Assembly (NCBI GenBank): GCA_002269645.1
Contig: NIVC01003268.1
Span: 1 to 64,000, forward strand
DNA from: Macrostomum lignano
Taxonomy: Eukaryota
Reading direction: 5' to 3'
Length of the DNA: 64,000 nt
The translations under genes and the position numbers were made by a program. The notes under the pieces were generated by a model. It worked only from the letters and a program-made list of their open reading frames with translations, made no database searches and was not told where the DNA came from. Positions 10,042 to 64,000 of the stretch are shown here, in pieces. Numbering within the stretch: the stretch's first letter is position 1; each line of letters begins with the position of its first letter.

Positions 10042-10057
10042 TTTTTATTTTAATATT

Positions 10058-11053: not shown

Positions 11054-11083
11054 TTTTTTAAAAAGAAAATTTAAAATAAAATA

Positions 11084-20953: not shown

Positions 20954-20992
20954 ACTGTATTAAATGCAATATCTGGCTAGAGCCCAGGGCCA

Positions 20993-24321: not shown

Positions 24322-24322
24322 C

Positions 24323-25500
24323 CAATGCAATCTGATGCAACCTGATACAATCTGATACAATCTGATACAATCTGATGCAACCTGATACAATCTGATACAA
24401 TCTGATACAATCTGATGCAATCTGATGCAATCTGATACAATCTGATGCAATCTGATACAATCTGATGCATTCTGATACAATCTGATGCAATCTGATACAA
24501 TCTGATACAATCTGATACAATCTGATACAATCTGATACAATCTGATGCAACCTGATACAATCTGATGTAATCTTATGCAATCTGATGCAACCTGATACAA
24601 TCTGATGTAATCTTATGCAATCTGATGCAACCTGATACAATCTGATGTAATCTTATGCAATCTGATGCAACCTGATACAATCTGATGCATTCTGATACAA
24701 TCTGATGCAACCTGATACAATCTGATGCAACCTGATACAATCTGATGCAACCTGATACAATCTGATGCAACCTGATACAATCTGATGTAATCTTATGCAA
24801 TCTGATGCAACCTGATACAATCTGATGTAATCTGATGCAATCTGATGCAACCTGATACAATCTGATGCAACCTGATACAATCTGATGCAACCTGATACAA
24901 TCTGATGTAATCTTATGCAATCTGATGCAATCTGATACAATCTGATGCATTCTGATACAATCTGATGCAACCTGATACAATCTGATGCAACCTGATACAA
25001 TCTGATGCAACCTGATACAATCTGATGCAACCTGATACAATCTGATGCAATCTGATACAATCTGATGCATTCTGATACAATCTGATGTAATCTTATGCAA
25101 TCTGATGCAATCTGATACAATCTGATGCAACCTGATACAATCTGATGCAACCTGATACAATCTGATGCAATCTGATACAATCTGATGCATTCTGATACAA
25201 TCTGATGCAACCTGATACAATCTGATGTAATCTTATACAATCTGATGCAACCTGATACAATCTGATGCAACCTGATACAATCTGATGCAACCTGATACAA
25301 TCTGATGTAATCTTATACAATCTGATGCAACCTGATACAATCTGATGCAACCTGATACAATCTGATGCAACCTGATACAATCTGATGCAATCTGATACAA
25401 TCTGATGCAACCTGATACAATCTGATGCAACCTGATACAATCTGATGTAATCTTATGCAATCTGATGCAATCTGATGCAATCTGATGCAACCTGATGCAA
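24323..25500. repeat. 10-bp satellite (CAA(T/C)CTGAT(A/G))n, about 118 copies, with 20-bp dimer structure
   Basis: Direct inspection. Confidence 0.97.
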
Positions 25501-25523
25501 TCCAGTGTCTAAACGCACGAACT

Positions 25524-28806: not shown

Positions 28807-28814
28807 TATATAAA
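28807..28814 (+). promoter_or_regulatory. TATA box of fibrinogen-related gene copy 1
   Basis: TATATAAA about 75 bp upstream of ATG 28887; conserved in copy 3 (62309-62316), destroyed in copy 2. Confidence 0.6.
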
Positions 28815-28886: not shown

Positions 28887-29974
28887 ATGCAGCTCTTTCA
28901 GTTGCGAGTTTCTGCAGCGTTGGCTCTGCTGCTCTGCTCGCTGGCAGCCGGCCAGGTCTCCCAGTGCGCTCCCGCTGACTCTCCGCGGCTCCGCTTCGTG
29001 GCGCAGCTCAGCGTGAACGGCTGCGCGCTGTTCGTGCACGACACGGGAGCGAGCGACGGTCCGCACTTGGCAGTCGAGCCGCTCATGTGCGTGACGGACA
29101 GCCTGAGAGGCATTGTTCCCCGATTCGACTTCATCACCCAGCAGATGTACTTCAGCGTTCCTGTATTGATGAGGGATGCTGGGATGCTCGCAGAGGCTCA
29201 GCGTCAACTGCGGCGTCTGTCACCGAGGTCTGTGAGCTTCGCCACGGTGACCAACATCAGCGTCTCAGCCGACACCCGCTCATCGGTTCGGGTTTTGGGC
29301 TTTCTGTGGACTCCAAATGAGACAGTAGCCACTCTGAGACTCGGCTTTGGAGAGAAGAAAGTCAACCCAATAAGAGGTTTTGTGTTACAAAATACGCCGA
29401 TTAAAAATCGGGAAAAAATTGAAAATTCAACAATCGAGACTCTAAAAAATGTAAAACTCTCAGCTACTCTTCTGTTGAATGGCTGTTTCCATGATGTCGA
29501 CAGCAGCGTCATGCTGCAAAACGACAGCTTCATCGAAGTCGGCGTGTACAAGCAAAAATTCTTACCCGCGTGCCGACAGCTGCGGTTCAATCGGTACGTT
29601 AAACTCGCGAACTGCTCTGCCCGAGTGCACCAGAGACTCGACATCAAGGGCCACTTCCTCATCGAGCCTCGGCTGTGCCACAACATCTCCAGCTTGAGCA
29701 GCGAGTCAGTCAGGTATGACTACAGCCGAGACATGCACTACCTTAAGCTGGATCTGGTGCTGCAAGATGAGGCCACACGCGATGCTGTGAGGACTCAGTT
29801 GGCCGACTTGTCGCCTCGCTCGGTCGACTTCATGCGACTGTGGACTGCTGAGAGATCGGTGAGCTCTTCGTTGAGTGCTCGGTTTGAGGTCGGTCCGCTG
29901 ATGGCGGCGGCAGACTGGAGGTCCGCTCAGCTGCGGCTGCTCTGCGGAAACTGGACGGAGTGCCGCGATCTCAG
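28887..29974 (+). CDS. Fibrinogen-related secreted protein copy 1, exon 1 (signal peptide plus two repeats of an unrecognised domain)
   Basis: ATG 28887, signal peptide MQLFQLRVSAALALLLCSLAAG. Donor CAG/GTTGGC at 29974/29975 (phase 2) matches acceptor TTCCAG/G at 30382/30383; both sites conserved in copy 3. Confidence 0.75.
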
Positions 29975-30382
29975 GTTGGCTGACATTTTTAAGGCATGTC
30001 TGTGAAGGCTTTACCTTTCATTTACCTTGATTTTATATTTTATATTTTTGCTTTCGAGCTGCTCTTCGCTGAACAGGTCATTATGAGTTTTGTAGTGAGA
30101 TTAAGAAAGATTTTTTTAGTATCAGTTTGGATGAAGAGTAAATTTTTGTCGGTAAGTCTCAGGTGGCCCGAATTGATGACCTAAAAAACACACAAACACA
30201 AATAGCATAGTTTTATAGTTTATGAAATAATTGCATGTTAGCGGCATCATTACTGTTTACCACATATACCCAGACTATAATATTTTACATTATTTACCAT
30301 TACTTGCTTTCGGCTTGTTTGACTTTATCTATCTATTCCTTCTTAGCGCTGTGCCGTTTACAAAGCAATTGACGACTTCCAG

Positions 30383-30723
30383 GGCTGCTGTGCTGGCGGA
30401 GCCCGCTGACCTGTGGCGACACGTGCAGTGGCGGGTGACGTCGCTGGTATCTAAGCAGTGCCTCCTAAAGTCCAACCGAATCACTTCATCATGGAGAATG
30501 AAGCCATCTGAAGATACAGTCAGCTGCTCCAGTCTGAAGTCCTGCGCCAGGCTGCAATGCGCCTCTGTTCAACGCACAGCGAACTCTTCCAGTGCGGTTC
30601 AACTGCAGCCAGACGGTCGCTGCTTCCTGAAGATTCAGGAGCGACTCACTGGCAGTGTGAGTTTTCAACGCAACTGGACTGAGTACGAGACTGGGTTCGG
30701 TGATGGCACTGACTTCTGGATCG
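30383..30723 (+). CDS. Copy 1, exon 2 (Cys-rich PAN-like module plus start of fibrinogen domain)
   Basis: SLKSCARLQC...DGRC then KIQERLTGSVSFQRNWTEYETGFGDGTDFWI; donor G/GTGAGC, phase 1. Confidence 0.85.
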
Positions 30724-31106
30724 GTGAGCGGCTTTTTTCATCGATTTTTCATATTACGTCTCAGGAATGGAAGCAGATCTTGTGCACTTATTAGCAGAAG
30801 GCTAGGTGACTCATTCTAAGTGAATGATGGAATGCATTCAATTGATGGAGGGGGTTGAAGTATTGCTCAGCTGGATAAAATGTTCAGTTAACGTTGCGTC
30901 ATAAGCTGGGTAATGCTCAATCGTGTATTGGCGTTGTCAGGTCTTGTGCGGCTTCAGTAAAACCTTATTTTCATGGAGTGCACTGAAAAGATGAGACCAT
31001 CGGTTCTTTCATTCTTAGTTCGAGGAGAGACCTGAGTACATGCTTCCCTCTGATTTCGGGAGAAACAGGAATATTGAGCTGCATGTTTTTTTCAATGAAA
31101 TCCAAA

Positions 31107-31628
31107 TGTGGGGTCTGGCCTGTTGAGTGCTCTTGCACTTGGTCGTTGGAGTTGTTTTTGCGTGCGCCCCATCCCTGGACCAGTTCTGGCTGGTCAGTGG
31201 GGGGAGTCGCTCGGCCCCGCTTCAGTCTTCTCCGCGGCGGCCACTGATTGGCTGGGCTTGTGTTTTTGTGTTTTTCTTTTCTCTCTACCCGCGGTGGCCT
31301 CTGATTAGCTGGGCCTGAGAGCTTGTGTTTTTCGCTCTAGCCCTTATTCAATGAGATCTGCTCGGCGGGCACGCTGATTGGCTGAGAAGTAGTTTTTTGT
31401 TTGGCGTCTTTCTCTCACGCTGTCTGCCTCTCTGCCCGGTTTAAGTGGTATAAATTGTTCTCCAGCCTGGCCCAGCCAGCTCCCCCGCCCCGCGCCTTGC
31501 GCATAATTCTCCAAACTAAACTAGCGATACTCAAGCGAGCCGTGAAGACGGTCTCTTACTGCGACGACTCAGCTAATTGCGAGTAAATAAAGCAGTCAGG
31601 TGGTAGATATATTCGAACAAGCTTCACA
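31107..31628 (+). mobile_element. LTR-like segment in intron 2 of copy 1
   Basis: Starts TGTG, contains TATAAAT and AATAAA, ends CACA, followed by PBS-like TGGCACC; absent from the paralogous intron; no TSD or partner LTR found. Confidence 0.35.
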
Positions 31629-32307
31629 GCTTCTGGCACCGGTAAGACGCCGAGTTCATTCGCTTCTTTAGCTTTTCTGAGGATTTTTCGTAGCAGTGAT
31701 TCCATAGCTAGAGCGTCATCACGCCTGCGACTGTGACCACTGCAGCACAGCAGCGTTGTATATTGTGTATTATTGTAGTACTGTACCGGTTACTTTATAT
31801 AGTGTGTACATCCTACAGTATCGAAACTAGAAGCATTCGAGAGTGTTACCACACCTCGAGCCGCAGCATGAATGCTGAGTGTCACAACACCAGACGGATC
31901 GACCTATTATCGCAGAGCGTCGTCATATCTGCTCGTATCCATAAAAGTACAAGACAGAGCGTCACTACGCCTGTTATTTTACGTATAACCTATTGTACTC
32001 CGGACTGGGCACTCAAACTGACCCGGGTTACGACACAAAGTATTGCTAAGGAGTTTTGTTGTTTAAGATTCGCTAGTGGCTGATTTAGTATATGTAGCTC
32101 GCAGACCAACCAAGCATCAAGCACAGCTGCTACAGTGACCCGATTGTGCAAGAAACAATGCCGAGTTGCTGCATGCATGCATAAATCTGCAGACAGACTC
32201 ATCGTAGGCATCACAGGGATACTCGTAGAGTCTGTTTGAGGTTGATGGCGAAGATCTGCAGGTTGGCGAGATGGCGAGAGCTGCAGCTGTCTTGATGCAC
32301 AGTTTTG

Positions 32308-32448
32308 TGCCGACTGCTTTACTCTGGTTGCTGTCATCTGTTTGCGCTTGTGCCAATCATGAGCAGCGCTCTCATGCCGACTGCTTTACCCTGGTTGCTG
32401 TCATCTGTTTGCGCTTGTGCCAATCATGAGCAGCGCTCTCACGCCGAC
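32308..32448. repeat. 67-bp tandem duplication
   Basis: TGCCGACTGCTTTAC.CTGGTTGCTGTCATCTG... at 32308 and 32375. Confidence 0.9.
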
Positions 32449-32751
32449 GCGCTCCTTTGTGGGTGAACCCAAATTATTCCTGTTAAAGCGCGCTCGTGTC
32501 CCAAAAAATACTCAGAAGATGCGTTTCAGTATTCTGCCCGTTCGACCCTGCAAGTATGAGTTAGGATATTGCATTTTTTTCATACGAACGCCACCTTGAA
32601 TTTTCCTTATAAACCTAAAGAAGATTGAAGGGCAACATTTGCACGAAAGGGGATGCAACCCTACAACCCTGCAAAAGCAACAGCTCGAATTTAAAGTGTA
32701 TACATGTATGGCATTAAAATGCAAACAGCGATGCAAGAAAATAAGAAAAAT

Positions 32752-33016
32752 ATACTCAGCAACATCGAAAAGTAGCCATCACTGAAGATCCGTCTGTGGT
32801 CGCCACTTTTGAGATTGCAGGTGAGGTCTCTCAAAATTTTGGAGTGACGCAACTTACTCGTAGTTACGCCGCGGCAGACTTTAGTTGAGGAATGAAGTGG
32901 GGATTGGTGTGCGAGGGTTGGACGGATTAAAGCTATCCAGATCAGTTTTCTCGAATCTTTCCTCGTAAATTGCTCACTGGCGCATAGAGTGGCGACTTTT
33001 CAATGTTGCTGAGTAT
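32752..33016. mobile_element. MITE-like element with about 29-bp imperfect terminal inverted repeats
   Basis: ATACTCAGCAACATCGAAAAGTAGCCA at left versus reverse complement ATACTCAGCAACATTGAAAAGTCGCCA at right; no clear TSD. Confidence 0.45.
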
Positions 33017-33609
33017 GTAATTTTTAAAGAAAAAACTGAGCACAACTAAAAGCGCTGCATAAACTGAGCGTGACGCAAATAAATGGGCGACGGCGCAGAA
33101 GCTAAGGCCCCCGCACCAGGACACCAGCTCATGCACGCAGAGCCAAGCACCCCCTCCCCAAACAGCGCGGACAGATAATGGGGAAGAGAGAACGCGTGCA
33201 AAGCGACACTGGCGGGGCAAAGGAGTAAAAACTGGTTAGGGACTTGTCTAAGCCATTCACAGACCAGCACATTACGGTATTCTCGCATACAATTCTATAT
33301 AGATAAGTGATGGCCCGGTCTTAGGTCTATTATTCAATGTTGAAACTCTGAGTTTTCAATGATAGGGCAGTCTGAGTTGAGGAGCAAAAAGGCCGTCCAA
33401 CTGAAGCATCACCAGCTTTCAGGTTGGCTGCATCAGCAGAAGTCATTCGCGCATTAATCCAGATTTTCAGCACAAGACATGTCAAACGTTTTGCTATATA
33501 ACCTTGTGCGTTGAAATATTTTCATGAACATCCGAATTTCGACTTACCTGACAGCAGCGGCGACAAGCCGAGCAGAAGTGACTCAGACTCAGCCGCTCTC
33601 CTCCCGCAG

Positions 33610-34025
33610 GTCTCTCTGCCATCCACTCGCTCAGCCAGGGCGGCGCCACCCTCAGAGTGGAGATGAAGCTGTGGAACGGCTCTGAGCTGCATGCGGAGTA
33701 CGCGGGATTCCAGGTGGGAGACGCCAGCACTGAGTATCGGATGACGTACCGAGAGATGCTGAGAGACAGGTCCAGTGTCAGCTTTGACGCCTTGGACCAC
33801 CACAAAGTTATGCGGTTCTCCACGATGGACAGGGACAATGACATATGGGATGCTTCATGCTCAAACAGTTTTGGAAAAGGAGGCTGGTGGTTTAAAAGCT
33901 ATCCCCACTTCAACCCTAACGGAATTTTTCCTTCAAAGGAGCCACGAGATATTAGCTATATGACCTGGTACACTGGCACTGGTTATCTGACTCTTCGTGA
34001 AGTGCGGCTGATGCTGCAGATTTGA
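33610..34025 (+). CDS. Copy 1, exon 3 (fibrinogen C-terminal domain, remainder)
   Basis: Acceptor CCGCAG/GT restores FWIGLSAIHSL..LRVEMK; FSTMDRDND, GGWWF, NPNG; stop TGA at 34023-34025. Confidence 0.9.
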
Positions 34026-34342
34026 GCAACAAAGTTGAGTAACCCAACAACGCATTCTTACGCTCGTGAAACTTTTGTCAAATCGGAGTTTTACTTAATT
34101 GTTTTTTTGAAACAAATTAGCATGTCTATGCAATATGTAAATTCAAAACAATGCTTTCTTAAATGTCTCTAATTGTAACTGTTTTAATTTTATTGACAGA
34201 AACTGAAAACACTTTGCAAGTTTAAACCAAAACCTAAGCCTACTTTAAACCTAATTTATACCTAATTTATTAGAAGCAAACAGTTTTCAACAATAAACTA
34301 CGAGCGTAACAAGAAAAAGTTAGCAACTATTCTACCAATCGA

Positions 34343-49005: not shown

Positions 49006-50417
49006 CAGTTTCGAAAATGAATAATAGGAGGATTGAGGAAGTGGCGACTAAAAGTAGTATGTTTAGAAAGTTGAGAGATAATATTAACTTGGAAATACTT
49101 CCGCTGCGATATGATAATAGAAGCTGAGAAATTTTTTTCACTCAAAATGATTGATTGGTGGATTTCCAGTAAGATTTGCCAAACCATTTTTTGCCCATCG
49201 AACGATCAGTACTAAGAGGGAAGTCACTCCTACCCACTCCAGAAAACTTACTTGGCTGCGCCATTCCGGAGCAACGCAGAAACAGGAACTTCAACAGCAT
49301 GAACAAAAAATTTGTTGCACACATTCTCAAACAAGAATCAAGTCGTCAGCTCTCTTGAAGGTCGAGTTATTCAACGATTCTGCCCGTAGGTGGAAATTTC
49401 GCGTAAGCGCTAATAAACTTACACCTTTCCACCTACGCCTTTCCACCAATCAGCTCTTTAGTAACAGTGAGTTCAATGATGTTGTGCAATTATTGCAATA
49501 CTTTAATACAAAAATATAAGCCTATGCTTGTTTTAGGCCTTCATTTTTACGGAAGGAAATTTAAAGTGGTTTATAAATGAAAATTATGTAATGAAAAATC
49601 TCTATCGGGTGTCCAGACGATCGCAGTTGCCTTGTTGCCATACCTTCAAGAGGCCGACGGCGTCACCCTGATGATGGATTGATTGAGAGTCTGGCTAAGC
49701 AGGTCCAGTCGTTGAGGTTATCTCATCATTGATACTCCCACTCAGAGCGCACAGAGGTGTATAAAAAGGCCCATAAGAAAAATCCAAAAAATTATCCGGC
49801 AGAGAGTGAATCTCACCTTAGAATTTCCACATCTAAAGCTACCAGGCTATCGCAAGAAACCAGTATTGTGTAGACTTTTTTTCAAAAAAAACATACACAA
49901 CATCGCACTACGTATGCTGCTGATTGAACCAATCTAAAAGCACCAACTTGGACACAGTTCGCATTGCAGACTGCAACAACAAAGCACCAGAACTTCCGAA
50001 AGGTCATCAGCACAAACAGAAAATAACGCAGCAAGGCAGGTAAAATTGATGCGCTGCATGGCGCAAAGGTTTCGAGTGACGCATGCAGTACCTCGGGATT
50101 CCAGACACTGTCTGGCAGAGAAAAAAGTGCATTTAGTCACGGGATTCTGGCCAACCGAATCCCCAGCTGAGGCAGACAGCCTGATGCAAATGGCAAACCG
50201 CGTGACGCATCTGGAATGCGAAGTGCAGCCTGCAGTCACGTGAAATTTATGCCATGGGCAGGGAATACTTCTTCTCGTAATGCGGCCATTTTATGCAGGA
50301 TGCAGCTTACCGACAGATTCCTTCCTCAGATTACCGACGCAACAACGAAAGGGGAACTTGACTCGATGCAGCTCTTTCAGTTGCGAGTTTCTGCAGCGTT
50401 GGCTCTGCTGTTCTGCT

Positions 50418-51698
50418 TCTTCTTCTTCTTCTTCTTCGGGCGTGCTCGGGCCAGGGCCCATGGCACCGGGCGTCAGATGGCGCCCGCCTTCCCGAGGAAG
50501 TTCAACACCGCGACGCAGTTCTCGAAAACTGCCGCGGGCTCCGGGCTTGGCCCCCAGAGGCGGCAGCGGTGAGATGTCAGGGCGGGGCAGGAGATCAGCA
50601 GATGGGCCGCCGTCTCCTCTCCATCGCCACAGAAGCGGCAGGTGGGGGCCACGTCATCGCCGATGGCGGCCTGGAAGCCCCGCAGAGCCGGGCAGCGGTC
50701 GGCGCGCAGCTGGCAGATCAGCCGCTCCTGCCGCCGCGTGGGGTCGCTCGTCGGCGGAGGCGGCAGGCGGCCCGCCGTGCAGGCAAGGTGCCAGGCAAGC
50801 GAGCTCGTGCTCACCGCCTCGGTGGCCGCCGCGTTGTAGATCTGGTGCCAGCGGGCGAGGCAGTGGCGGCGGACGGCAGCCTGCGCGGCAGCTAGCGGGA
50901 CGGGCGCGGTGCCTTGCGCCAGCGTGGTGCCTTGCTTGGCGATCGCGTCCACGGCCTCGTTGCCTGGGATTCCCGCGTGGCCAGGCACCCAGTGCAGGTG
51001 GACCGAGGTTCCCCGGGCCGCGAGGTCGGCGAGGCTGGCCCAGACGGCGTCGATCATGGTGGCACCCGTCGACCCGGGGGCGCTCAGGGAGTCGGAGCAG
51101 ATGCGGACCGGCGACAGCTCTGCCGGGTCCGGGGCCGCGAGCACCCACCGAAGGGCCTCAGCGATGGCCACTAACTCGGCGTGGAAGCTGGACGTCACAT
51201 GGCCAGCAGCGACGCACAGCGTCGTGTTGGGCTCGACCAGGACGCCACTGCCGCCGTCCAGGATGCCGTCCTTCGCCGCTCCGTCGGTCCAGATCACGGT
51301 GCTGGCGGGCGGCAGGGCGGCAAGCGTCTGCTGCGCCGCGGCTCTCCGGGCCTCCGGCAGGTCCCCCCGCGAGGTCGGGGAGGCCAACTGCAGCCCGAGG
51401 GTGACGGAGTCCAGAACAGCCCAGGGAGGTGTCGTCGGGACAGCGTGGACGGGCTCTCGCGGGAAGCCGCTCAGGCCCGCAGCTCTGCATACACTGGCCG
51501 CCGTCTCGCGCCAGCCGCGGGCGCTTTGGAGGCGGCGGCGCGGGCCGACGCTGGCCGCGCCGGCGCGCAGCGGGTTGTCATGCGGCAGCCTGAGGGCGCG
51601 CTCATGGAGGAGGCCAGCGTGCATCTCCTCGCGGACTGCCATCGGCGGCAATCCGGCCTCGCGCTCCAGCACCTCCGACCTGGTGTTCCAGGTGGTCG
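50418..51698 (-). mobile_element. 5'-truncated GC-rich LINE (I/Nimb/Ingi-like) with RNase H and C-terminal zinc motif
   Basis: 13-bp TSD CTGCTGTTCTGCT at 50405-50417 and 51699-51711; (GAA)7 tail; IWTDGA, HAELVAI, ICSDSLS, HWVPGHAGIPGNEAVDAIA, CRFCGDGEETAAHLLISC. Confidence 0.93.
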
Positions 51699-52954
51699 CT
51701 GCTGTTCTGCTCGCTGGCAGCCGGCCAGGTCTCCCAGTGCGCTCCCGCTGACTCTCCGCGGCCCCGCTTCGTGGCGCAGCTCAGCGTGAACGGCTGCGCG
51801 CTGTTCGTACACGACACGGGAGCGAGCGACGGTCCGCACTCGGCAGTCGAGCCGCTCATGTGCGTGACGGACAGCCTGAGAGGCATTGTTCCCCGATTCG
51901 ACTTCATCACCCAGCAGCTGTACTCCAGCGTTCCTGTATTGATGAGGGATGCTGGGATGCTCGCAGAGGCTCAGCGTCAACTGCGGCATCTGTCACCGAG
52001 GTCTGTGAGCTTCGCCACGGTGACCAACATCAGCGTCTCAGCCGACACCCGCTCATCGGTTCGGGTTTTGAGCTTCCTGTGGACTCCGGATGAGCCAGTA
52101 GCCACTATGAGATTCGGATTTGGAGAGAAGATCCGATATGAAGTTCTACATCTCCGAGAAAACATCATTCTAAGACTTCTGAATATCGATCCAATGAGAA
52201 CCTTACTAATTCAAAGTACCCAGACGCGGATCGTCGAGAAAAATAATGAAAGTTCAATAATCGAGACTCTAAAAAATGTAAAACTCTCAGCTACTCTTCT
52301 GTTGAGTTTCTGTTTCCATGAGGGTCAGAGCCGCATCATGCTGCAAAACGACAGCTTCATTGAAGTCGGCTTGTGCAGGAAAAAATTCTTACCCGTGTGC
52401 CGACAGCTGCGGTTCAGTCGGTACGTCAAACTTGAGAACTGCTCTGTCCGAGTGCACGAGACGCTCGACACGATGGGCCACTTCCTCATCGAGCCTCTGC
52501 TGTGCCACAACATCTCCAGCTTGAGCAGCGAGTCAGTCAGGTATGACTACAGCCGAGACATGCACTACCTTAAGCTGGATCTGGTGCTGCAAGATGAGGC
52601 CACACGCGATGCTGTGAGGACTCAGTTGGCCGACTTGTCGCCTCGCTCGGTCGACTTCATGCGGCTGTGGACTGCTGAGAGATCGGTGAGCTCTTCGTTG
52701 AGTGCTCGGTTCGAGGTCGGTCCGCTGATGGCGGCGGCAGACTGGAGGTCCGCTCAGCTGCGGCTGCTCTTCTCTCCTATCTCTCCTCCTTTCTCTCTAT
52801 TCTTCCATCTCTAATCTGTTCACTCTCGTCTCTGCTCTGCACTCTTTTCTTTCCCCACTTTTGACTGCTAATTTTCCTTTCTTCTCTTTTATTCTCTTCC
52901 CTCTTCTATACTCTCTCTCTAAAAAGCAGCCTAACTTTAAAAGCGCACATCGCT

Positions 52955-53295
52955 GTTCAGGATTAACCTTTGAACTTGAAATTTCACACGATTGTGTTAC
53001 AGATTATTGTCTGTGTCAAACTTAAAGAGGATTAATAAAAGTAGAGCGGCGCTAAGGAGGATTTAGTGAAAAATCCTGCTTTTCTAGCAGTTTTTTGCTT
53101 TTTTGAGTAGAAAGACTTAGACTTAGGAAATTTTAAGGTAAGCCTAAGACATTCTCCGTAGTGAGTTCAGGGTGGGTGCAAAAATTGGTTTGATTTGCTT
53201 GAGCGGTTTGGGAGTCCATAGCGATCAAAATTGTACACAGACAGACACACAGACAGACACAGACAGAGTTTTGATTTTTATAGGTGTAGATAGAA
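52955..53295 (+). mobile_element. Possible non-autonomous Helitron/Helentron-like fragment
   Basis: (CAGA)n-rich tract followed by TTTTATAGGTGTAGAT; absent from the paralogous introns; pattern recognition only. Confidence 0.25.
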
Positions 53296-56200
53296 GATTT
53301 TGCGGCTGCTAGGTGTCAAGCTGTACATTTTCAAATGTTTCGGCAGGTAAGCGAACAGATATTAAGACCTGCTAACTTAGGAATCAGAATTCAGAACTGA
53401 TACAGTTGCATAGTGGCTCCAAGGCGCTGTTTATAGATACCAAATTTGAGTCTCCAGTTGAGTTATTGGTACAGCGGTACTCAAATATTGCCTAAGAATA
53501 GCCTTTTGAAATTCAGAAGCAATCTTCTCAAAAATACGCATTTCTAGCTGTCGTATCGAAAGATTTATGGAGTTCACTCGCTGTTTTATTTTTATCGATT
53601 GACTGACAATACTTCATTGAAACGTGTGCGTTCTTTTAAGTTTAAGCTGCCGGACGGTCAGCTGAGCTGACCATGGACCAACAGCCTTTTCTGGTGGTAA
53701 TTTTTTGTAGTCAATGGTAAAAGAAAAATGATGTAGACGTTCCTGCCGAGCATGGTCAGCAGCACTGAACATTTACGAAAAATGGGTGAAAAACTTATCT
53801 GCAATGGAATGCAGCGACTCGGTTTCAGCATTCTCAGTGATGACATCATCAGTCTCAGAATCGGATGTATGCAAGATTTCTATGGTTGTAGCTGATTCAC
53901 TTATCAATAAAATGATGCACTACTCGTATTAAACCCCGAAAATGCGGTGGCCTGCTCTGCAGGCCATAGCTAATGGTCTATGGCTTGCGAATCATTTGAA
54001 TGCTGTTTCGAAAATAAGTCTGCATAACCGTAGCTTGCGGCTTTGGCCTGCTCAGCAGGACATGCCTATTTTTTATACAGAAAACATTTGTGAATCACAG
54101 TCAACGAGTCTTTCTATCGAGCATTAAGATTCCAGCAATAGTCTATAACTAGCCCAGCTGACCATTTCGGCAGGAACGGAGCTTTTGTATTTCTAGCTCC
54201 GGCGCAAATAGGTTTTAAACACTGCCTTTGTCTTTGACGCATTTTAGCTAAAACCGTTTGTAAATCGATCATGCCATTTAAAAATGGCAACGTTTAAAAG
54301 TAGACAAAGTTGACTTGTAATGTGTCAATCTGTTGCACATCTTATCAAGGACAATTTCTTTTCAGAAAGACATGGCATTTCTGGCTCAATCGTCAAACAA
54401 ATAGTATTTTGCGTACATATGAAGTGAGATTTTGAATTCATTCGAAAGACGTATTTTAAATGCGTGCTCATTTGTATTTTTGTTCTTGTCATTCCTTCGT
54501 AGCCCTGTGCCGTTTAAACAAGTAATTGACGACTTCCAGGACTGCTGTGCTGGCGGAGCCCGCTGACCTGTGGCGACACGTGCAGTGGCGGGTGACATCG
54601 CTGGTTGCTGGGCAGTGCCTCTCCAAGTCCAGCCAAATCACTTCATCATGGAGAATGACACCGCCTGTAAGCGACAGCTGCTACAGTCTGAAGTCCTGCG
54701 CCAGGCTGCAATGCGCCTCTGCTCAACGCACAGCGAACTCTTCCAGTGCGGTTCAACTGCAGCCAGACGGTCGCTGCTTCGTGAAGTTTCAGCAGCGACT
54801 TACTGGCAGAGTGAGTTTTCAGCGAAACTGGACTGAGTACGAGACTGGGTTCGGTGACGGCACTGACTTCTGGATCGGTGAGTGGCTTGTCAATTGATGT
54901 GCGTCAGGAACTGAAGCAGGTCTTATCAACTGCCATAGGAGTGTCATTTAGGCCGTACAATCAATAACGTTCGTTGGTTGGTGGCTGTGGAAATTTTACG
55001 CTCGTAGTTCTTCGGACCGCCCTGCAGCTAAGTGGAAATTTTAGCAAAACTTTTTTTCCTACATCTTTTCCAGCTTTTCGAAACTTGTATGTCTTTATCT
55101 TAAAAATCTGTATTTATATCCTAAGTAAGTAAGTATTCCTCTGTAGGCTCTGCGCTGAATTGGATGTCATGTTACAAACAAGTAATTATTCGTACGACGC
55201 TCGAATCCAACAAACAACAGCAACAACAAAGTACGCTGCCCAGCATGCAAGTCACAGTTAGAGCAGGGCGTGTCAGATGGCGCGTCCCAGATCTTGAGAG
55301 CAGACAAAGTTCGCCCCGTTGGCAGTGTCGAGCTCCCTGGCGTGGCATAGCATGCATTAAATTATTAAGCTGAATAAATGAAAATGTAAAATATAATCAA
55401 ATGCCTTAAAAATTTTAATTAACTGTTAAATAAACCATTCAATTAATTATCTAGAGGCACATTGATATAAAAGATCCAGCAAAGTTGCAAGTAAAAATGA
55501 TTCAAGTTTTTGTGCGACTCAACTTTAAATTTCTAACCCCACTGTCCCAATGCAAATTCTAGCCAAGCTTAAAATCAAAATATGAGGAGATAGGGCAGTC
55601 TGAGTGGAGAAGAGCAGATAAAAGGCCGTACAGCTGAAACATTGCCAGCTTCCAAGTGAGCTGCATCAATAGAATTCATTGGCGCCTCAATCCAGACTGC
55701 CTGGGCAAGTCAGGCCTAAAATTATGGAAAATATATTTTCATCAATTTTGAGTCACGACTCACCTGACAGCAGCGGCGACAAGCCGAGCAGAAGTGACTC
55801 AGACTCAGCCACTCTCCTCCCGCAGGCCTCTCCGCCATCCACTCGCTCAGCCAGGGCGGCGCCACCCTCAGAGTGGAGATGAAGCAGTGGAACGGCTCTG
55901 AGCTGCATGCGGAGTACGCGGGATTCCAGGTGGGAGACGCCAGCACTGGGTATCGGATGACGTACCGAGAGATGCTGAGGGACAGGTCCAGTGTCAGCTG
56001 GGATGCTTTGCAGCTCAGCAAAGGCATGCGGTTCTCCACGATGGACAGGGACAATGACGTATGGGATGCTCAGTCATGCTCAAACACACTCGGAAATGCA
56101 GGCTGGTGGTTTCATTACTGCCGCCACTTCAACCCTAATGGATTTTATCCTTCGCAAGAAAGGATAGATATAATTGGCAATATGGTGTGGTACATTTCTT

Positions 56201-57002
56201 ATAGTAAGAAACTGTCTCTTCGTGAAGTGCGGCTGATGCTACAGATTTGAGCATAAGAATTGAGCGACTTGTCGATGTACCCTGTTTATTCAAGTAATTT
56301 TTTATCGGACTTATGCTAAAAATTCTAAAATATTTTGTAGGAGAATAACAAGCATGTTCCTGCAAAATATTAACCGCAAAATACCGATTTTTAAAGTCTC
56401 TTTGATGCAAGAGTTTTACTGAATGAAAACACTCGACAGCTTAAAAACTAAAAACAATATTTTTGCTTGTTTAAACTTAATAAACTCATTTTTATATACT
56501 TAGACTTTTTTCAACAATATGCTAAAAGACAAACCATCCTAACGCAACGCATCTGTGCAACTCAAATACAGAGTTGTTGTTCGCCACTTTTCCTTCACAT
56601 TTTTTGCATTCGAATTTCCTACAAATTGCAAGCTGAAAGCCTCAAGTTTGTTGCTACGAGCGTATGAAGCTTTTCTGAAGTCTTGCTTTTCTGATACTGA
56701 CTGATAATCCCCTATAGATGCCTGTGATTTGAGCGCATTTTAAATGGATTTATACACAAGCACATGTGATGAACGGGAGGGAGGAGACTTCAGGTTAGTT
56801 GCCTCACCTGGGTTCGTGTACTGAACCTTTAGCGCTACGGTCCTCCAACCTACTAGCGTACGAAGCAAAAGTCGGTTGAGATCTCGGAACGGCCCAGGCT
56901 CGGCTCGGTCGTCGGCACGGCTCGGTCGTCGGCTCGGCTTCAAGACGAAGATCGCCACTACATTTATACGCGCAGTCTCAAAGCGTTGACCGGGGAGGGG
57001 CG

Positions 57003-60110: not shown

Positions 60111-62308
60111 TTTTAGAGGCGTCACGAGGTTGGTTCACAGTTTTATTCAATATTAAAAAAGCTCATGAGGTTTCGTCTGCCGAGAGAGACAGGATGCATT
60201 CAGAATGGATTTTTGTAGTGAAGAGCTAGGGCTGTTGATTGCTGCATTGCTGAATGTGATGCATAGCTGCATCAGTTTGTGTATTGCAAGTGCATTTTAG
60301 GCGATCAGTAGCTTCACAATTTCATAAAAGATGTAGCAGCCGCCGAAAACTCGAAGCCTATTTAATGCTCTATGAAATCAAATTTTTAAAAGAGGTGAGA
60401 CCAATGCGCTCTGACTGCAGGAAAAACATTCAGAACGTTGATCTATCTCTGACATGAGGCCAAAACTTTTGAGTGTACTGCAGGGTGCATTTCTTCTTGC
60501 ACTGGTATTCAAATTTAGGCTCGGGTTTATAATAGTATAACCTGGTGAGACAAGTTGAATATTTTAGTAAATTCATTTTTAGGAGCGTCTGCACCCAGAA
60601 ATGTTGGTTAAAATTGTTGGGATATGGACTTTTTAGCCAATTGAAAGAGGTGAAAATGCGTACAAAAATAGATAATAGGAGAATTGAGGATGGCGAGTAA
60701 AAGTAGTATGGTTGGAAAGTTTTGAGTGAAAGATGATCACGTTGATAATTTTGAAATTTCGATGCAATGGGATAATGGAGGCTGTGAAGGTATATTTATC
60801 CCTTAAAATGATTGATTGGTAGATTAGCAGTAGGAATTCGAAGCTTCTTCCGCTCGTCGAGCTACTCAGACGGGAATCCCCGGCGATTTACTTTGCTGCA
60901 CCAGTGCGGAGCAACGCAGGAAAAGTCAATTCAAGACAATGTGCTCAAATTTTGTTGTGCACCTTCTCCAACAACAATAAAGTCAGCAGCCTTCTGGAAC
61001 GTCAAAGTATTCAACGATTCTGCCAGAAATTAGCAATCAATGTTTTCTATAAGCGCCAGTGAATTCAATACTCCACTGTGCGCCAATCAGCACTGCGTCT
61101 CGGTGTGACCTCCCTATTTTATCGGAACGTCAAACACATGTCTGCAACAGCTCTGGCTTAGATGGTAATTGGAATGTACACTGGCTGAGCGTCTGGATCT
61201 TTAACATGGGCACCGGGTTTCTATGGACACAGTACTGCGAATTTCTGTGACGGCTTTGATCAAGCCTCCACGGAGGGCAAACCTGAATTTCTCGGTGTCC
61301 TCACCTGGTTTCTCAGGCATTCGTTCATCGCAGACACACATGAAATCAAGTATAATTTACTCTTTTTATTAAACAATCTACTATTTGCTAAACAATGTTC
61401 CTACACGTGTAAGTAGTAAATTTTGTTTAGTTTGCAGTATTTCCTGTCGTAATTTAGCGCTATTTTTCCTTTTTTGTTTCGATAGTTTATATTACCCGAT
61501 GTTGAGTAACACTCGAAATGTATGTCAGTGAATTCAATGCGGTTCTGCAATTTTTTTAATGCTAAAATACAATAATATGAGCAAATGCTTATTTACAGAA
61601 GAGATTTATGCAAAAAGTTAAGAGATTCAGAAATATGATGAAATCTCTATCCGGTGTCAAGACGATGGCAGTTGCCTGGCTGCCACCCGTTCAAGAAGTC
61701 CACGGCGTCACCTGATGACGGATTGTTTGAGGGTTTTGCTGAGGAGGTCCAGTCGTTGAGGTTTCTCATTATTGAAACTCTCATAAAATGAGAGTCTTGG
61801 GAACTATTGGAAGAATCCGGAAAAACTGTCCAGCAAGGAACAAATCCCAGCTTCGAAGTTTCATATCAAAAGCAAACTGGCTTTCGCAAGAACCCAGCAT
61901 TGCATAGAATTACCTAAAAGCCATTGCACAAGAAAACACTGCGCGTGCTGCACACTGAATAAATATGAAAACACAGACTTGGACACAGTTCGCATTGCAG
62001 ACTGCAAAAGCAAAGCCCCAGAACTTCTGAAAGGTCATCCAGCAAAAACCGAAAATCCCGCAGCAAGGCAGGTAAAATTGATGCGCTGCATGGCGCAAAG
62101 GTTTCGAGTGACGCATGCAGTGCCTCGGGATTCCAGACACTGTCTGGCAGAGATAAAAGTGCATTTAGTCACGGGATTCTGGCCAACCGAATCCCCAGCA
62201 GAGGCAAACAGTCTGATGCAAATGGCAAACCGCGTGACGCGTCTGGAATGCGAAGTGCAGCCTGCAGTCACGTGAAATTGATCCCATGGGCAGGGAATGC
62301 TTCTTCTC

Positions 62309-62316
62309 TATATAAA
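62309..62316 (+). promoter_or_regulatory. TATA box of copy 3
   Basis: TATATAAA at the same position relative to the ATG as in copy 1. Confidence 0.6.
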
Positions 62317-62388
62317 TGCAGCCATTTTACAGAATGCAGCTGCAATCCTCAGATTACCGATACAACAACGAAAGGCGAACTTGACTCG

Positions 62389-63524
62389 ATGCAGCTCTTT
62401 CAGTTGCGAGTTTCTGCAGCGTTGGCTCTGCTACTCTGCTCGCTGGCAGCCGGTCAGGTCTCCCAGTGCGCTCCCGCTGACTCTCCGCGGCTCCGCTTCG
62501 TGGCGCAGCTCAGCGTGAACGGCTGCGCGCTGTTCGTGCACGACACGGGAGCGAGCGACGGTCCGCACTTGGCAGTCGAGCCGCTCATGTGCGTGACGGA
62601 CAGCCTGAGAGGCATTGTTCCCCGATTCGACTTCATCACCCAGCAGCTGTACTTCAGCGTTCCTGTATTGATGAAGGATTCTGGGATGCTTGCAGAGGCT
62701 CAGCGTCAACTGCGGCATCTGTCACCGAGGTCTGTGAGCTTCGCCACGGTGACCAACATCAGCGTCTCAGCCGACACCTGCTCATCGGTTCGGGTTTTGG
62801 GCTTCCTGTGGACTCCGGATGAGTCAGTAGCCACTCTGAGACTCAACTTTGGAGAGAACATTCGATATGAAACTCTACATCCCGAAAACATTGTTCTAAG
62901 ACTTCTGAATATCGACTCAATGAGAAACTTCCTAAATCAAAATACCCAGATGCAGAGTCGAGAAAACAAAGAAAATTCAACAATCGATGCTCTTAAAAGG
63001 GTGAAGCTCTCAGCTACTCTTCTGTCGAATGGTTGTTTCCATGAGGCTCAGAGCCGCGTCATGCTGCAAAACGACAGCTTCATTGATGTCAGCGTGTACA
63101 AGCAAAAATTCTTACCCGCGTGCCGACAGCTGCGGTTCACTCGGTACGTCAATCTCGAGAACTGCTCTGCCCAAGTGCACCAGAGACTCGACATTGAGGG
63201 CCACTTCCTTATCGAGCCTCCGCTGTGCCACAACATCTCCAGCTTGAGCAGCGAGTCAGTCAGGTATGACTACAGCCGAGACATGCACTACCTGAAGCTG
63301 GATCTGGTGCTGCAAGATGAGGCCACACGCGATGCTGTGAGGACTCAGTTGGCCGACTTGTCGCCTCGCTCGGTCGACTTCATGCGGCTGTGGACTGCTG
63401 AGAGATCGGTGAGCTCTTCGTTGAGTGCTCGGTTCGAGGTCGGTCCGCTGATTGCGTCGGCAGACTGGAGGTCCGCTCAGCTGCGGCTGCTCTGCGGAAA
63501 CTGGACGGAGTGCCGCGATCTCAG
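62389..63524 (+). CDS. Fibrinogen-related secreted protein copy 3, exon 1
   Basis: ATG 62389, signal peptide, 1136 nt (phase 2), donor CAG/GTTGGC as in copy 1. Confidence 0.75.
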
Positions 63525-63945
63525 GTTGGCTGACATTTTGTTATAGGTTGAAACCTTTGAAGACTTTATCTTTCGTTTACCGTGATTTTATATTTTATAC
63601 TTTTGCTTTCAAGCTGCTCTTCTCTAAACACGTCATTATGAGTTTTGTAGTGAGATTAAAAAAACTTTTTAGTATCAGTTTGGAAGAAGAGTAAATTTAA
63701 GTCTGTAAGTTTCAGGTGGCCCGAATTTATGACGTTAAAACACACAAGCACAAATAGCATCGTTTTATAGTTTATAAAATAATTGCATGTTAGCGGCATA
63801 TTTACTATTTACCACATATACCCAAACTATAATATTTTACATTATTTACCATTACTTGCTTTCGACGCCGCTTGCTTGTTTGACTTTATCTATTTATTTA
63901 TTCTTAGCACTGTGCCGTTTACAAAAAACAATTGACGACTTCCAG

Positions 63946-64000
63946 GGCTGCTGTGCTGGCGGAGCCCGCTGACCTGTGGCGACACGTGCAGTGGCGGGTG
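63946..64000 (+). CDS. Copy 3, exon 2 (partial, runs off the window)
   Basis: Acceptor TTCCAG/G then AAVLAEPADLWRHVQWRV. Confidence 0.75.

What the first reader, a model, noticed from the sequence alone, without database searches (positions are those of the whole stretch)
28887..34025. Fibrinogen-related protein with an unrecognised large N-terminal region, hidden by splicing
Seen: three exons join with compatible phases (2, then 1) into 1845 nt (614 aa): signal peptide, about 340 aa of unrecognised sequence, Cys-rich PAN-like module, then a fibrinogen domain lacking its usual N-terminal strands (DGRCFLKIQER replaces GGGWTVIQRR). Known: invertebrate FRePs (ficolins, tachylectins, snail IgSF-FREPs) are pattern-recognition lectins with varied N-termini. 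Inference: a lineage-specific, tandemly expanded immune or adhesion lectin family. Unspliced exon 1 also ends in a nearby stop, so a short secreted isoform is possible.
Basis: partly seen in the sequence, partly recalled or inferred. Interest (0 to 1): 0.75.

Follow-up and report, generated by a model that had tools for sequence, protein, structure and literature searches.

The report
Flatworm lectin gene with new repeat domain
This is an already annotated three-exon gene of the flatworm Macrostomum lignano encoding a secreted fibrinogen-type lectin, whose "unrecognised" front half is two copies of a Macrostomum-restricted domain that has no match among known families or solved structures and that is also found joined to C-type lectin heads.

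Summary
The three-exon model (28887-29974, 30383-30723, 33610-34025; 614 aa) is correct. It equals GenBank PAA52284.1 (Macrostomum lignano BOX15_Mlig011340g2), so it is not hidden.

Pfam recognises only a fibrinogen C-terminal domain (aa 436-597, profile 35-205 of 221). The "340 aa of unrecognised sequence" is two copies (R1, R2) of a module of about 180 aa. This module occurs once or twice before a fibrinogen domain, and five or six times before a C-type lectin domain, in other Macrostomum proteins. A profile search of 1.84 billion proteins found 15 hits; every named one is M. lignano.

AlphaFold models the module at pLDDT 93. It has no Pfam match and no Foldseek match in the PDB. The exon 1/2 junction falls inside a helix of R2, so exon 1 cannot be a separate gene. 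The "PAN-like module" is the tail of R2 plus a shrunken fibrinogen A-subdomain.

The window holds three tandem copies; copy 2 is a retroelement-disrupted pseudogene. Paralogues are mosaic: the module cores are near identical, while the R1 tail and the ligand-binding P-subdomain are highly divergent.

A lectin function is inferred, not shown. Interest is moderate.

The parts
28807..28812 (+). TATA-like box, about 75 nt upstream of the ATG. It lies inside a roughly 400-bp upstream block (from 28476) that is 92-96% identical in copies 2 and 3.
   Evidence: Pattern scan; self-blastn.
28887..29974 (+). Exon 1 (coding part, 1088 nt, aa 1 to 362 plus 2 nt). It encodes the signal peptide, repeat R1 and most of repeat R2. 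Donor CAG|GTTGGC.
   Evidence: The donor motif is identical in copy 3 at 63522. The junction is used in the deposited protein PAA52284.1.
28887..28952 (+). Signal-peptide-like N-terminus (aa 1-22, MQLFQLRVSAALALLLCSLAAG|QVS).
   Evidence: It is the only hydrophobic window in the protein (KD19 = 1.87 at aa 3-21), with small residues at -3 and -1. No dedicated predictor was available.
28962..29516 (+). Repeat module R1 (about aa 26-210). Cys27, Cys46, Cys68 and Cys200 are conserved cysteines C1, C2, C3 and C6; C4 and C5 are lost. Its tail (about aa 151-226) is the hypervariable segment among paralogues.
   Evidence: BLASTP of R1 against R2: 28% identity over 137 aa, E = 3e-9. HMM hits. Alignment. 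Segment identities.
29550..29974 (+). Repeat module R2, exon-1 part (aa 222-362). It holds Cys229, Cys243, Cys264, Cys353 and Cys359.
   Evidence: AlphaFold2 model of aa 222-411: mean pLDDT 93.3, pTM 0.85.
29975..30382 (+). Intron 1 (408 nt, GT-AG). It is conserved at about 91% in copy 3.
30383..30491 (+). Repeat module R2, exon-2 part (aa 363 to about 399): the second half of helix alpha-3, helix alpha-4, two strands and the sixth conserved cysteine (Cys389).
   Evidence: The model is confident to unit residue ~178. The junction lies at unit residues 141/142, inside helix 135-147. The tail is present in every repeat of the multi-repeat relatives.
30383..30723 (+). Exon 2 (341 nt, aa 363-477). 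Donor TCG|GTGAGC.
30525..30623 (+). Reduced A-subdomain of the fibrinogen-related domain (aa 411-443). It has a C-x5-C loop, an extra Cys422/Cys443 pair, and DGRC where canonical domains have GGGW.
   Evidence: The Pfam match starts only at profile position 35, and at 34-39 in all relatives. Comparison across the family.
30600..30723 (+). Fibrinogen_C (PF00147) match, exon-2 part (from aa 436).
   Evidence: 119 bits; cut-off 22. PDB profile hits to fibrinogen, ficolin, angiopoietin and tenascin domains, E down to 1.6e-32.
30724..33609 (+). Intron 2 (2886 nt, GT-AG). It contains about 2.6 kb that is absent from copy 2's intron.
33610..34025 (+). Exon 3 (coding part, aa 477-614, stop at 34023-34025): the B and P subdomains of the fibrinogen-related domain.
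33828..33842 (+). D-R-D-N-D (aa 550-554), aligned to the calcium-site motif D-N-D-N-D of the fibrinogen gamma chain.
   Evidence: Alignment to 3fib_A. The position of the calcium site is from established knowledge of fibrinogen gamma and ficolin structures.
33900..33902 (+). TAT (Tyr574) where paralogues and canonical domains have the second Cys of the P-subdomain disulfide. Cys560 (33858-33860) is left without its partner.
   Evidence: Alignment A1. The same change is present in the duplicate gene on another contig.
34292..34297 (+). AATAAA, about 270 nt after the stop codon.
49947..56253 (+). Copy 2, a pseudogene. A 1282-bp 5'-truncated non-LTR retroelement (50417-51698) sits in the signal-peptide codons. 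It is flanked by a 12-bp target-site duplication, CTGCTGTTCTGC, at 50405-50416 and 51699-51710, and carries an RNase H ORF on the minus strand. The last 31 nt of exon 1 and its donor are replaced from 52771. Exons 2 (54538-54879) and 3 (55825-56250) are still open.
61978..64000 (+). Copy 3. It has the upstream block, an intact exon 1 (62389-63524), an identical donor, intron 1 and the start of exon 2 (from 63944), then runs off the window.

Best explanation
The locus is an expressed, correctly spliced three-exon gene of Macrostomum lignano for a secreted, N-glycosylated, modular lectin-type protein.

Architecture: signal peptide, then two copies (R1, R2) of a disulfide-bonded alpha/beta module of about 180 aa that has been found only in Macrostomum-like sequences, then a C-terminal fibrinogen-related domain (FReD). 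The FReD's A-subdomain is shrunk to a short Cys loop plus one strand. Its B and P subdomains, including the calcium-site motif, are kept.

How it most likely works (inferred): the FReD is the ligand-binding head, for carbohydrate or acetyl-group ligands as in ficolins and tachylectin 5A. The R modules are a rigid stalk, spacer or second interaction surface. The same R module carries a different lectin head (a C-type lectin domain) in other Macrostomum proteins. The organism therefore has a family of 'R-module + lectin head' proteins, built on the same logic as the snail IgSF-lectin (VIgL: FREP/CREP/GREP) family but on an unrelated scaffold domain.

The family sits in tandem arrays. Paralogues are mosaics. 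Module cores and the FReD B-subdomain are kept nearly identical, with low synonymous divergence, which is consistent with gene conversion. The R1 tail and the ligand-binding P-subdomain are old and highly divergent. The repertoire therefore differs mainly where ligands would be contacted.

Shown: the gene model, the domain architecture, the repeat family and its restriction, the confident fold model with no known relative, the tandem array and the mosaic divergence.
Inferred: secretion, disulfide pairing, lectin activity, the stalk role and any immune role.
For: Gene model:
- The translation is clean and identical to PAA52284.1.
- That annotation comes from a genome-guided RNA-seq assembly (PMC5730564).
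- Copy 3 has an identical donor.
- A 618/619-identical duplicate lies on another contig.

FReD: Pfam 119 bits; PDB profile hits to fibrinogen, ficolin, angiopoietin and tenascin FReDs, E = 1e-32 to 1e-22.

Repeat module:
- R1 against R2, E = 3e-9.
- An HMM finds it 2x in all FReD paralogues, 1x in P0029, 6x in P0021 and 5x in P0033/34. The last three end in Lectin_C.
- A profile search of 1.84e9 representative proteins gave only 15 hits. All named ones are M. lignano.

Fold: AlphaFold2 mean pLDDT 93.3, pTM 0.85. There is no PDB Foldseek hit below E = 0.1 and TM is at most 0.23. No consistent Pfam hit at E <= 10 for 27 units.

Exon 1 and exon 2 belong together:
- The junction lies inside helix alpha-3 of R2.
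- Cysteine co-occurrence across 36 units, counted as both present / both absent / discordant: C2-C3 28/7/0, C4-C5 25/10/0, leaving C1 (exon 1) to pair with C6 (exon 2), 21/2/4.

Secretion: a single N-terminal hydrophobic stretch and 10 sequons.

Mosaic divergence:
- dS is 0.03-0.06 in the cores and 0.32-0.38 in the R1 tail and P-subdomain. Omega is 0.4-1.0.
- Segment identities are 91-96% in the cores and 22-73% or 42-64% in the variable segments, with different nearest neighbours per segment.

Family size and spread: OG0000014. Paralogues are clustered on other contigs. The snail parallel is from PMC5433772.
Against: - No binding, expression or localisation data exist for any member.
- This particular copy has lost the second Cys of the near-universal P-subdomain disulfide (Tyr574) and the GGGW tryptophan (Cys443). 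Its pocket may therefore be altered or inactive.
- Omega of 0.4-1.0 against its neighbours indicates weak constraint. One of the two neighbours is a pseudogene.
- I did not see RNA-seq reads myself. Multi-mapping reads from paralogues could support a model at a silent copy.
- The 'no known fold' statement rests on Foldseek against the PDB and BFVD only. AlphaFold DB could not be searched.
- One marginal BFVD hit exists (Medusavirus protein, E = 9e-4, TM 0.55).
- The restriction to Macrostomum reflects what is in the databases. Few other macrostomorph proteomes are present.
Confidence: 0.6

Rival explanations
1. Exon 1 is a separate gene that encodes a short secreted two-domain protein ending at the stop just past the GTTGGC donor. 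Exons 2-3 are an independent fibrinogen-domain gene.
For: Read-through of the donor reaches a stop after 9 codons. The donor departs from the GTRAGT consensus at +3, +4 and +6. Two metagenome ORFs (P0025, P0030) end at the homologous position. That would equally result from prokaryote-style ORF calling that reads into an intron.
Against: - The deposited RNA-seq-guided model joins the exons exactly as proposed.
- All about 20 paralogous proteins read through the same junction.
- The junction lies within a helix of a confidently modelled domain, and the exon-2 part supplies two strands and the sixth conserved Cys.
- The same module is continuous in intronless transcript-derived ORFs (P0021).
- Exon 2 has no start codon or signal peptide of its own. 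Its ORF begins with intron sequence.
Confidence: 0.03
2. This copy is a decaying or functionally shifted family member. It is an intact ORF, but its FReD no longer binds the ancestral ligand, or the gene is silent. It is carried along in a tandem array that is turning over.
For: - The conserved P-subdomain Cys is lost (Tyr574), leaving an unpaired Cys560. The GGGW tryptophan is lost. R1 has a 17-residue deletion in its tail relative to copies 2 and 3.
- Omega is 0.6-0.8 over the gene.
- The neighbouring copy 2 is demonstrably dead.
- Retroelements and an 11-kb minisatellite flank the gene.
Against: - The 614-codon ORF is open across three exons with canonical GT-AG sites.
- The duplicate on another contig is 618/619 identical, including Tyr574. 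The state is therefore stable and the ORF has been kept in both.
- The W-to-C change co-occurs with a second new Cys (LQC...GRC) in five paralogues. That looks like a compensated new disulfide rather than decay.
- A transcript-based model exists.
Confidence: 0.2
3. The family is real and secreted, but its role is not pathogen recognition. It acts in reproduction, mucus or extracellular matrix, adhesion, or feeding. The FReD and C-type lectin heads would then bind self glycans.
For: - FReD proteins in animals also serve as matrix or signalling proteins (tenascins, angiopoietins, FGL1), and these are among the best PDB matches.
- The multi-repeat relative P0021 starts with a Thr/Pro-rich mucin-like stretch.
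- Macrostomum adhesion proteins are known to use lectin domains (PMC6410801 and PMC8621496, listed).
- Rapidly evolving, lineage-specific families in Macrostomum are often reproduction-related (PMC7336406 title and abstract).
Against: There is no direct evidence either way. Divergence concentrated in the ligand-binding P-subdomain, a large tandem family, and head swapping between FReD and C-type lectin domains all parallel the snail VIgL immune lectins. The gene IDs were not found in the held text of the supplementary files searched for four Macrostomum papers; the only hit was the orthogroup list of PMC7336406 (at least that file was cut when stored).
Confidence: 0.35

Closest known systems
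Biomphalaria glabrata VIgL family (FREPs, CREPs, GREPs): IgSF domains joined to a C-terminal fibrinogen, C-type lectin or galectin domain
   Same: Both are secreted proteins with one or two N-terminal globular domains followed by a C-terminal FReD. The same N-terminal scaffold is also combined with a C-type lectin head. Both form large, lineage-restricted, clustered gene families with segmental, gene-conversion-like mosaicism.
   Different: The scaffold is not an immunoglobulin domain. It is an alpha/beta module with three helical segments and up to three disulfides, with no Ig Pfam hit and TM of at most 0.23 to Ig structures. The number of scaffold repeats reaches six. No galectin-headed member was seen. 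No somatic diversification or parasite binding has been shown.
Ficolins, tachylectin 5A and FIBCD1 (FReD pattern-recognition lectins)
   Same: All have a C-terminal FReD with the conserved B and P subdomain core, the WW motif and a D-x-D-x-D calcium-site motif. Profile E-values to ficolin-1, -2 and -3 are 1e-28 to 1e-24.
   Different: There is no collagen-like region or short Cys-rich N-terminal oligomerisation segment. The A-subdomain is reduced: the Pfam match starts at position 34-39 in every member. This copy lacks the P-subdomain disulfide.
Fibrinogen gamma and alphaE C-terminal domains, angiopoietins, FGL1, tenascins
   Same: These are the best sequence matches among solved structures (1fzd E = 1.6e-32; 3fib 4.5e-30; ANGPTL2 2.2e-28; tenascin-R 1.4e-27).
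   Different: Those proteins multimerise through N-terminal coiled coils. Here the N-terminus is two globular repeat modules.
Annotated M. lignano paralogues ('Fibrinogen C-terminal domain-containing protein'; orthogroup OG0000014 of Brand et al. 2020)
   Same: They share the architecture and have 39-100% identity. The gene in the window is one of them (PAA52284.1).
   Different: None. This is the family the gene belongs to. What had not been described, as far as the searched literature shows, is the N-terminal repeat module and its link to the C-type lectin proteins.

Membership tests
Fibrinogen-related domain (Pfam PF00147) | Profile match above the curated threshold | tested here: met
   119 bits against a cut-off of 22, E = 3.5e-34, aa 436-597. 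PDB profile hits to many FReDs.
Fibrinogen-related domain (Pfam PF00147) | Complete A-subdomain: the first ~35 profile positions, with the N-terminal Cys paired to the Cys before GGGW | tested here: not met
   The match starts at profile position 35, and at 34-39 in six relatives. Upstream there is only a C-x5-C loop plus about 20 residues here, and C-x4-8-C plus one strand in distant members. A structural test failed: the full-length model had pLDDT below 50 in this region.
Fibrinogen-related domain (Pfam PF00147) | Calcium-site motif D-x-D-x-D in the P-subdomain | tested here: met
   DRDND (aa 550-554) aligns with DNDND of the fibrinogen gamma fragment 3fib. Metal binding itself was not tested.
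Fibrinogen-related domain (Pfam PF00147) | P-subdomain disulfide (C...GGWW..xC) | tested here: not met
   The second Cys is Tyr574 in this gene and in its duplicate. It is present in 11 of the other 12 aligned paralogues; the twelfth (P0019) is truncated before this position.
Fibrinogen-related domain lectins | Binding of carbohydrate or acetylated ligands | not testable with these tools
   This needs recombinant protein and glycan or acetyl-ligand binding assays.
Snail VIgL FREPs | One or two N-terminal IgSF domains | tested here: not met
   No Ig-family Pfam hit at E <= 1 or at E <= 10 on 27 repeat units. The confident model is alpha/beta, and its best Ig-containing PDB matches have TM of at most 0.23 and E above 0.1.
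Snail VIgL FREPs | C-terminal FReD, and sister proteins with the same scaffold plus a C-type lectin head | tested here: met
   This is an analogy of architecture, not homology of the scaffold.
Ficolins | Collagen-like Gly-X-Y region N-terminal to the FReD | tested here: not met
   No Gly-X-Y run is present in the 614-aa sequence (read directly). No Collagen Pfam hit.
   No PAN hit at E <= 1. The first Cys of the stretch (Cys389) belongs to the repeat module, which is modelled at pLDDT above 90 to about aa 399 and conserved as C6 in 27 of the 30 units that cover that position. The remaining stretch is about 35 aa.
New 'R module' repeat family (defined here) | Core motifs GC..V[HY].R.D..G.F[LV][IL]EP[LF].C, SV.FM.LW and LR..C....C..L, plus the tail P..[LF][WF]......C | tested here: met
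   Both R1 (C4 and C5 lost) and R2 (all six Cys) match an HMM built from the family and align with 34 other units.

The most novel reading that the evidence does not exclude
The R module is a previously undescribed extracellular protein fold. It serves as the common scaffold of a Macrostomum-specific system of diversified lectins: R + FReD with 1-2 modules, and R + C-type lectin with 5-6 modules. This would be a convergent counterpart of the snail VIgL immune lectins. Gene conversion would keep the scaffold uniform, while the R1 tail and the FReD P-subdomain carry the recognition diversity.
Probability: 0.3. Interest if true: 0.7.

Novelty: new variant of a known kind. Interest (0 to 1): 0.5.

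Why it matters
Fibrinogen-domain lectins are a recurrent solution for non-self recognition in invertebrates, and each lineage has attached the head to a different stalk: collagen in ficolins, coiled coils in angiopoietin-like proteins, and IgSF domains in snail FREPs. This locus shows a further solution in a free-living flatworm: a lineage-restricted alpha/beta repeat module, re-used with a C-type lectin head.

If the module is a new fold and the family acts in recognition, it gives three things:
- a tractable case, since M. lignano has transgenesis and RNAi, for studying how modular lectin repertoires arise and diversify;
- a new domain family for the databases;
- a concrete example of gene-conversion mosaicism in a flatworm multigene family.

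If it is only a matrix or reproductive protein family, it is an ordinary lineage-specific expansion.

Tried and rejected
1. AlphaFold2 of the full-length protein with 13 close paralogues gave mean pLDDT 42, and below 50 over the FReD. It was not used for fold search. The structural state of the FReD A-subdomain therefore remains untested.
2. A PDB sequence search with the family profile returned FReDs only and nothing for the first ~420 positions.
3. A word-index protein search with the 27-unit repeat alignment returned only five M. lignano fragments and added nothing.
4. Pfam scans of 27 repeat units at E <= 10 gave only scattered single hits.
5. Foldseek against the PDB gave no hit below E = 0.1. 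Foldseek against BFVD gave one marginal hit to an uncharacterised Medusavirus protein. This is recorded as a lead, not as a relationship.
6. Literature: 'Macrostomum lignano' + 'fibrinogen' gave no relevant paper. Gene identifiers are absent from main texts and from the supplements of three Macrostomum papers. They were found only in the orthogroup table of Brand et al. 2020, so no expression class could be assigned.
7. Positive selection: Nei-Gojobori omega is 0.4-1.0 in all segments. There is no evidence for omega above 1. The variable segments differ because dS is also high, so the pattern is a mosaic of ages or conversion, not hypermutation.
8. The PAN/apple reading was rejected.
9. The exon-1-only gene was rejected (see rivals).

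Full report
**Origin and observation.** The window is Macrostomum lignano genomic DNA. The protein predicted from the finding is 100% identical over its whole length to GenBank PAA52284.1, 'hypothetical protein BOX15_Mlig011340g2, partial'. They join in phases 2 and 1 into an uninterrupted 1845-nt reading frame of 614 codons. The splice sites are CAG|GTTGGC...CCAG|G and TCG|GTGAGC...CGCAG|G. The deposited protein uses exactly these junctions and only adds five in-frame residues of 5' UTR. The M. lignano annotation was built from a genome-guided RNA-seq assembly (PMC5730564), so the model is transcript-based, although I did not see the reads myself. A TATA-like box lies at 28807 and an AATAAA at 34292. 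The gene is therefore real and correctly modelled, and it is already annotated rather than hidden.

**Recognised parts.** Pfam finds a single family, Fibrinogen_C, over aa 436-597. It matches profile positions 35-205 of 221 at 119 bits, and nothing else appears even at E <= 1. A profile of 13 paralogues matched only fibrinogen-related domains in the PDB: fibrinogen alphaE and gamma, angiopoietin-like proteins, ficolins, tenascins and FGL1, with E from 1e-32 to 1e-22. All matches fall in profile positions about 420-600. The N-terminus is the only hydrophobic stretch and ends with small residues at -3 and -1. The protein has ten N-glycosylation sequons and no other membrane-like segment. It is therefore most likely secreted.

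**The 'unrecognised' 340 residues.** They are an internal duplication. Residues about 35-165 align with about 230-365 at 28% identity, E = 3e-9.

- I built a profile of the N-terminal region from six diverse paralogues and searched it with HMMER against 1.84 billion representative proteins. It returned only 15 hits. Every hit that carries a name is from M. lignano. The unnamed ones come from Logan or JGI assemblies.
- The hits revealed that the region is a repeat module used in several architectures. It occurs once before a fibrinogen domain (P0029, 452 aa). It occurs twice before a fibrinogen domain in this family and in P0022, P0026 and P0027. It occurs six times (P0021) or five times (P0033, P0034) before a C-terminal C-type lectin domain.
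- An alignment of 36 non-redundant units defines a module of about 180 aa. Its hallmarks are GC..V(H/Y).R.D..G.FLIEPLLC, SV.FM.LW and LR..C....C..L, followed by a tail P..LW......C.

**Fold.** A first AlphaFold2 run on the full protein with only close paralogues failed (mean pLDDT 42). A second run used one unit (R2, aa 222-411) with the 27-unit alignment. It gave mean pLDDT 93.3 and pTM 0.85, and it is confident to about aa 399. The model is an alpha/beta domain of eleven strands and four helices. Foldseek found no PDB structure below E = 0.1, and TM was at most 0.23. Pfam scans of all 27 units at E <= 10 gave nothing consistent. In BFVD there was one marginal match to an uncharacterised Medusavirus protein (E = 9e-4, TM 0.55). 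AlphaFold DB was not available, so 'new fold' is a strong lead and not a conclusion.

- The exon 1/exon 2 junction (aa 362/363) lies inside helix alpha-3 of R2. Exon 2 supplies the rest of that helix, helix alpha-4, two strands and the sixth conserved cysteine.
- Across the 36 units, cysteines C2 and C3 are always present or absent together (28 both, 7 neither, 0 discordant). The same holds for C4 and C5 (25, 10, 0). That leaves C1, encoded in exon 1, to pair with C6, encoded in exon 2 (21 both, 2 neither, 4 discordant).
- Together with the deposited model, the identical donor in copy 3 and the continuity of the module in an intronless transcript-derived ORF, this makes 'exon 1 is a separate gene' very unlikely. 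The proposed unspliced short isoform would be an incomplete domain.
- The 'Cys-rich PAN-like module' dissolves. Its first cysteine is C6 of R2. The rest is a C-x5-C loop and about 20 residues in front of DGRC. In more distant members the corresponding region is only C-x4-8-C plus one strand.
- All members match the Pfam fibrinogen profile only from position 34-39.

**State of the fibrinogen domain in this copy.** The calcium-site motif is kept: DRDND aligns with DNDND of the gamma chain. The second cysteine of the P-subdomain disulfide is Tyr574, which leaves Cys560 unpaired. Eleven of the other 12 aligned paralogues keep the cysteine; the twelfth is truncated before that position. A duplicate gene on another contig is 618/619 identical and has the same Tyr, so this is not an assembly error. 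The GGGW tryptophan is Cys443. In five paralogues this change co-occurs with a second new cysteine (LQC...GRC), which suggests a new disulfide.

**Genomic context.** The window holds three head-to-tail copies.

- Copy 2 (49947-56253) is a pseudogene. A 1282-bp 5'-truncated non-LTR retroelement sits in the signal-peptide codons. It carries an RNase H ORF on the minus strand, ends in a (GAA)n tail and is flanked by a 12-bp target-site duplication. The end of exon 1 and its donor are replaced as well.
- Copy 3 (from 61978) has an intact exon 1 and runs off the window.
- Other paralogues are also clustered on their contigs.
- Brand et al. 2020 place the family in orthogroup OG0000014. It has 26 M. 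lignano genes plus M. spirale and M. hystrix transcripts, and none from M. pusillum are listed.

**Divergence pattern.**

| Segment | dS, copy 1 vs copies 2/3 | Protein identity among nine paralogues |
|---|---|---|
| R1 core | 0.03 | 91-96%* |
| R1 tail | 0.32-0.34 | 22-73%* |
| R2 core | 0.06 | 84-94%* |
| FReD B-subdomain | 0.03 (first 50 codons of exon 3) | 90-97%* |
| FReD P-subdomain | 0.38 (rest of exon 3) | 42-64%* |

*Ranges are for the close paralogues; the most divergent rows of the matrices (P0008, P0009, P0014) are left out, not the same ones for each segment.

Omega is 0.4-1.0 throughout. Nearest neighbours differ between segments. This is a gene-conversion-like mosaic in which the ligand-binding subdomain and one loop-rich tail hold the diversity. 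There is no evidence for omega above 1.

**Interpretation.** The best-supported reading is a secreted modular lectin-type protein. The fibrinogen domain is the binding head, and the R modules are a stalk or second interaction surface. The family also uses a C-type lectin head on the same scaffold. The closest known system in logic is the snail VIgL family (FREPs, CREPs, GREPs; PMC5433772). However, the defining IgSF domains are absent, so this is an analogue and not a member. Function, ligand, tissue and any immune role are untested. No expression data for these genes were found.

**Verdict.** The added value is the resolution of the N-terminal half into a Macrostomum-restricted repeat domain with a confident model, no known relative, and dual use with two lectin heads. 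Interest is moderate (0.5). I rate it a new variant of a known kind.

Noticed in passing
window 34343-45793 and 57004-57538: A 23-bp minisatellite (consensus CTGTTCTATCAGTATTGTGCTGT) of about 499 copies (11.4 kb, 94% matches) starts about 320 bp after the gene's stop codon. The same unit (23 copies) follows copy 2. It is therefore part of the duplicated unit and has expanded hugely after copy 1.
   Followed up: partly
window ~400-11600: A cluster of ORFs typical of a Maverick/Polinton-like element: rve integrase (10058-11089, minus strand), adenovirus-type cysteine protease (5165-5566, minus strand), a PLA2-like domain (11084-11554, plus strand), and several minus-strand ORFs at 5651-9470 with a YTDTDS polymerase-B-like motif split over frames (apparently broken). 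A deoxynucleoside-kinase-like ORF lies at 12506-12961.
   Followed up: partly
window 17227-22555 (minus strand): A long non-LTR retrotransposon with an ORF1-like protein, an AP endonuclease, a reverse transcriptase and RNase H in separate ORFs.
   Followed up: partly
window 45861-48419 (minus strand): A fragment of an LTR (gypsy-type) retroelement pol, with RT-RNase H, integrase zinc-binding and integrase core domains. It lies between the minisatellite and copy 2.
   Followed up: partly
window 16308-17127, 48740-49011, 58861-59679, 23465-25502: Long pentanucleotide microsatellites, (TTTAG)n twice and (TTTTG)n, plus 53-bp and 20-bp minisatellites upstream of the gene.
   Followed up: no
window 30734-33361 (intron 2): About 2.6 kb of intron 2 has no counterpart in copy 2's intron. 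It contains a 67-bp tandem duplication (32308-32448) and two CTGATTGGCTG motifs (31244, 31374) upstream of a TATAAA-like site. This may be an inserted element or promoter-like remnant.
   Followed up: no
P0021 (L001 199-4587), P0023, P0033, P0034: Large secreted proteins (1285-1462 aa) with four to six R modules detected (six in P0021, five in P0033/P0034, four in the N-terminally incomplete P0023). P0021, P0033 and P0034 end in a Pfam Lectin_C domain; P0023 is named C-type lectin domain-containing by UniProt. P0021 also has an N-terminal Thr/Pro-rich mucin-like stretch. It comes from an intronless 4.8-kb Logan contig (SRR30276812) of unknown species.
   Followed up: partly
R-module model m3ca9b74c032e: The only structural match below E = 0.001 in any library was a predicted structure of an uncharacterised Medusavirus stheno protein (A0A7S7YF07; E = 9e-4, TM 0.55 on the query, 161 columns, 16% identity). 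The meaning is unknown.
   Followed up: no
P0025, P0030 (JGI/IMG metagenome ORFs): Two short ORFs from environmental contigs encode single R modules (about 37% identity). Both end exactly at the position homologous to the end of exon 1 (...C.LL[KR]). This suggests that the intron position is conserved in a related, unsampled animal.
   Followed up: no
contigs of P0003/P0051 (508 kb), P0014/P0018/P0053 (352 kb) and P0009/P0055/P0057 (76 kb): Paralogues lie next to each other on other contigs. Each cluster appears twice in the assembly with near-identical proteins, which is consistent with the known duplicated (hidden polyploid) M. lignano genome. On the 508-kb contig the counterpart of this window's dead copy 2 is an intact gene (P0003).
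   Followed up: partly
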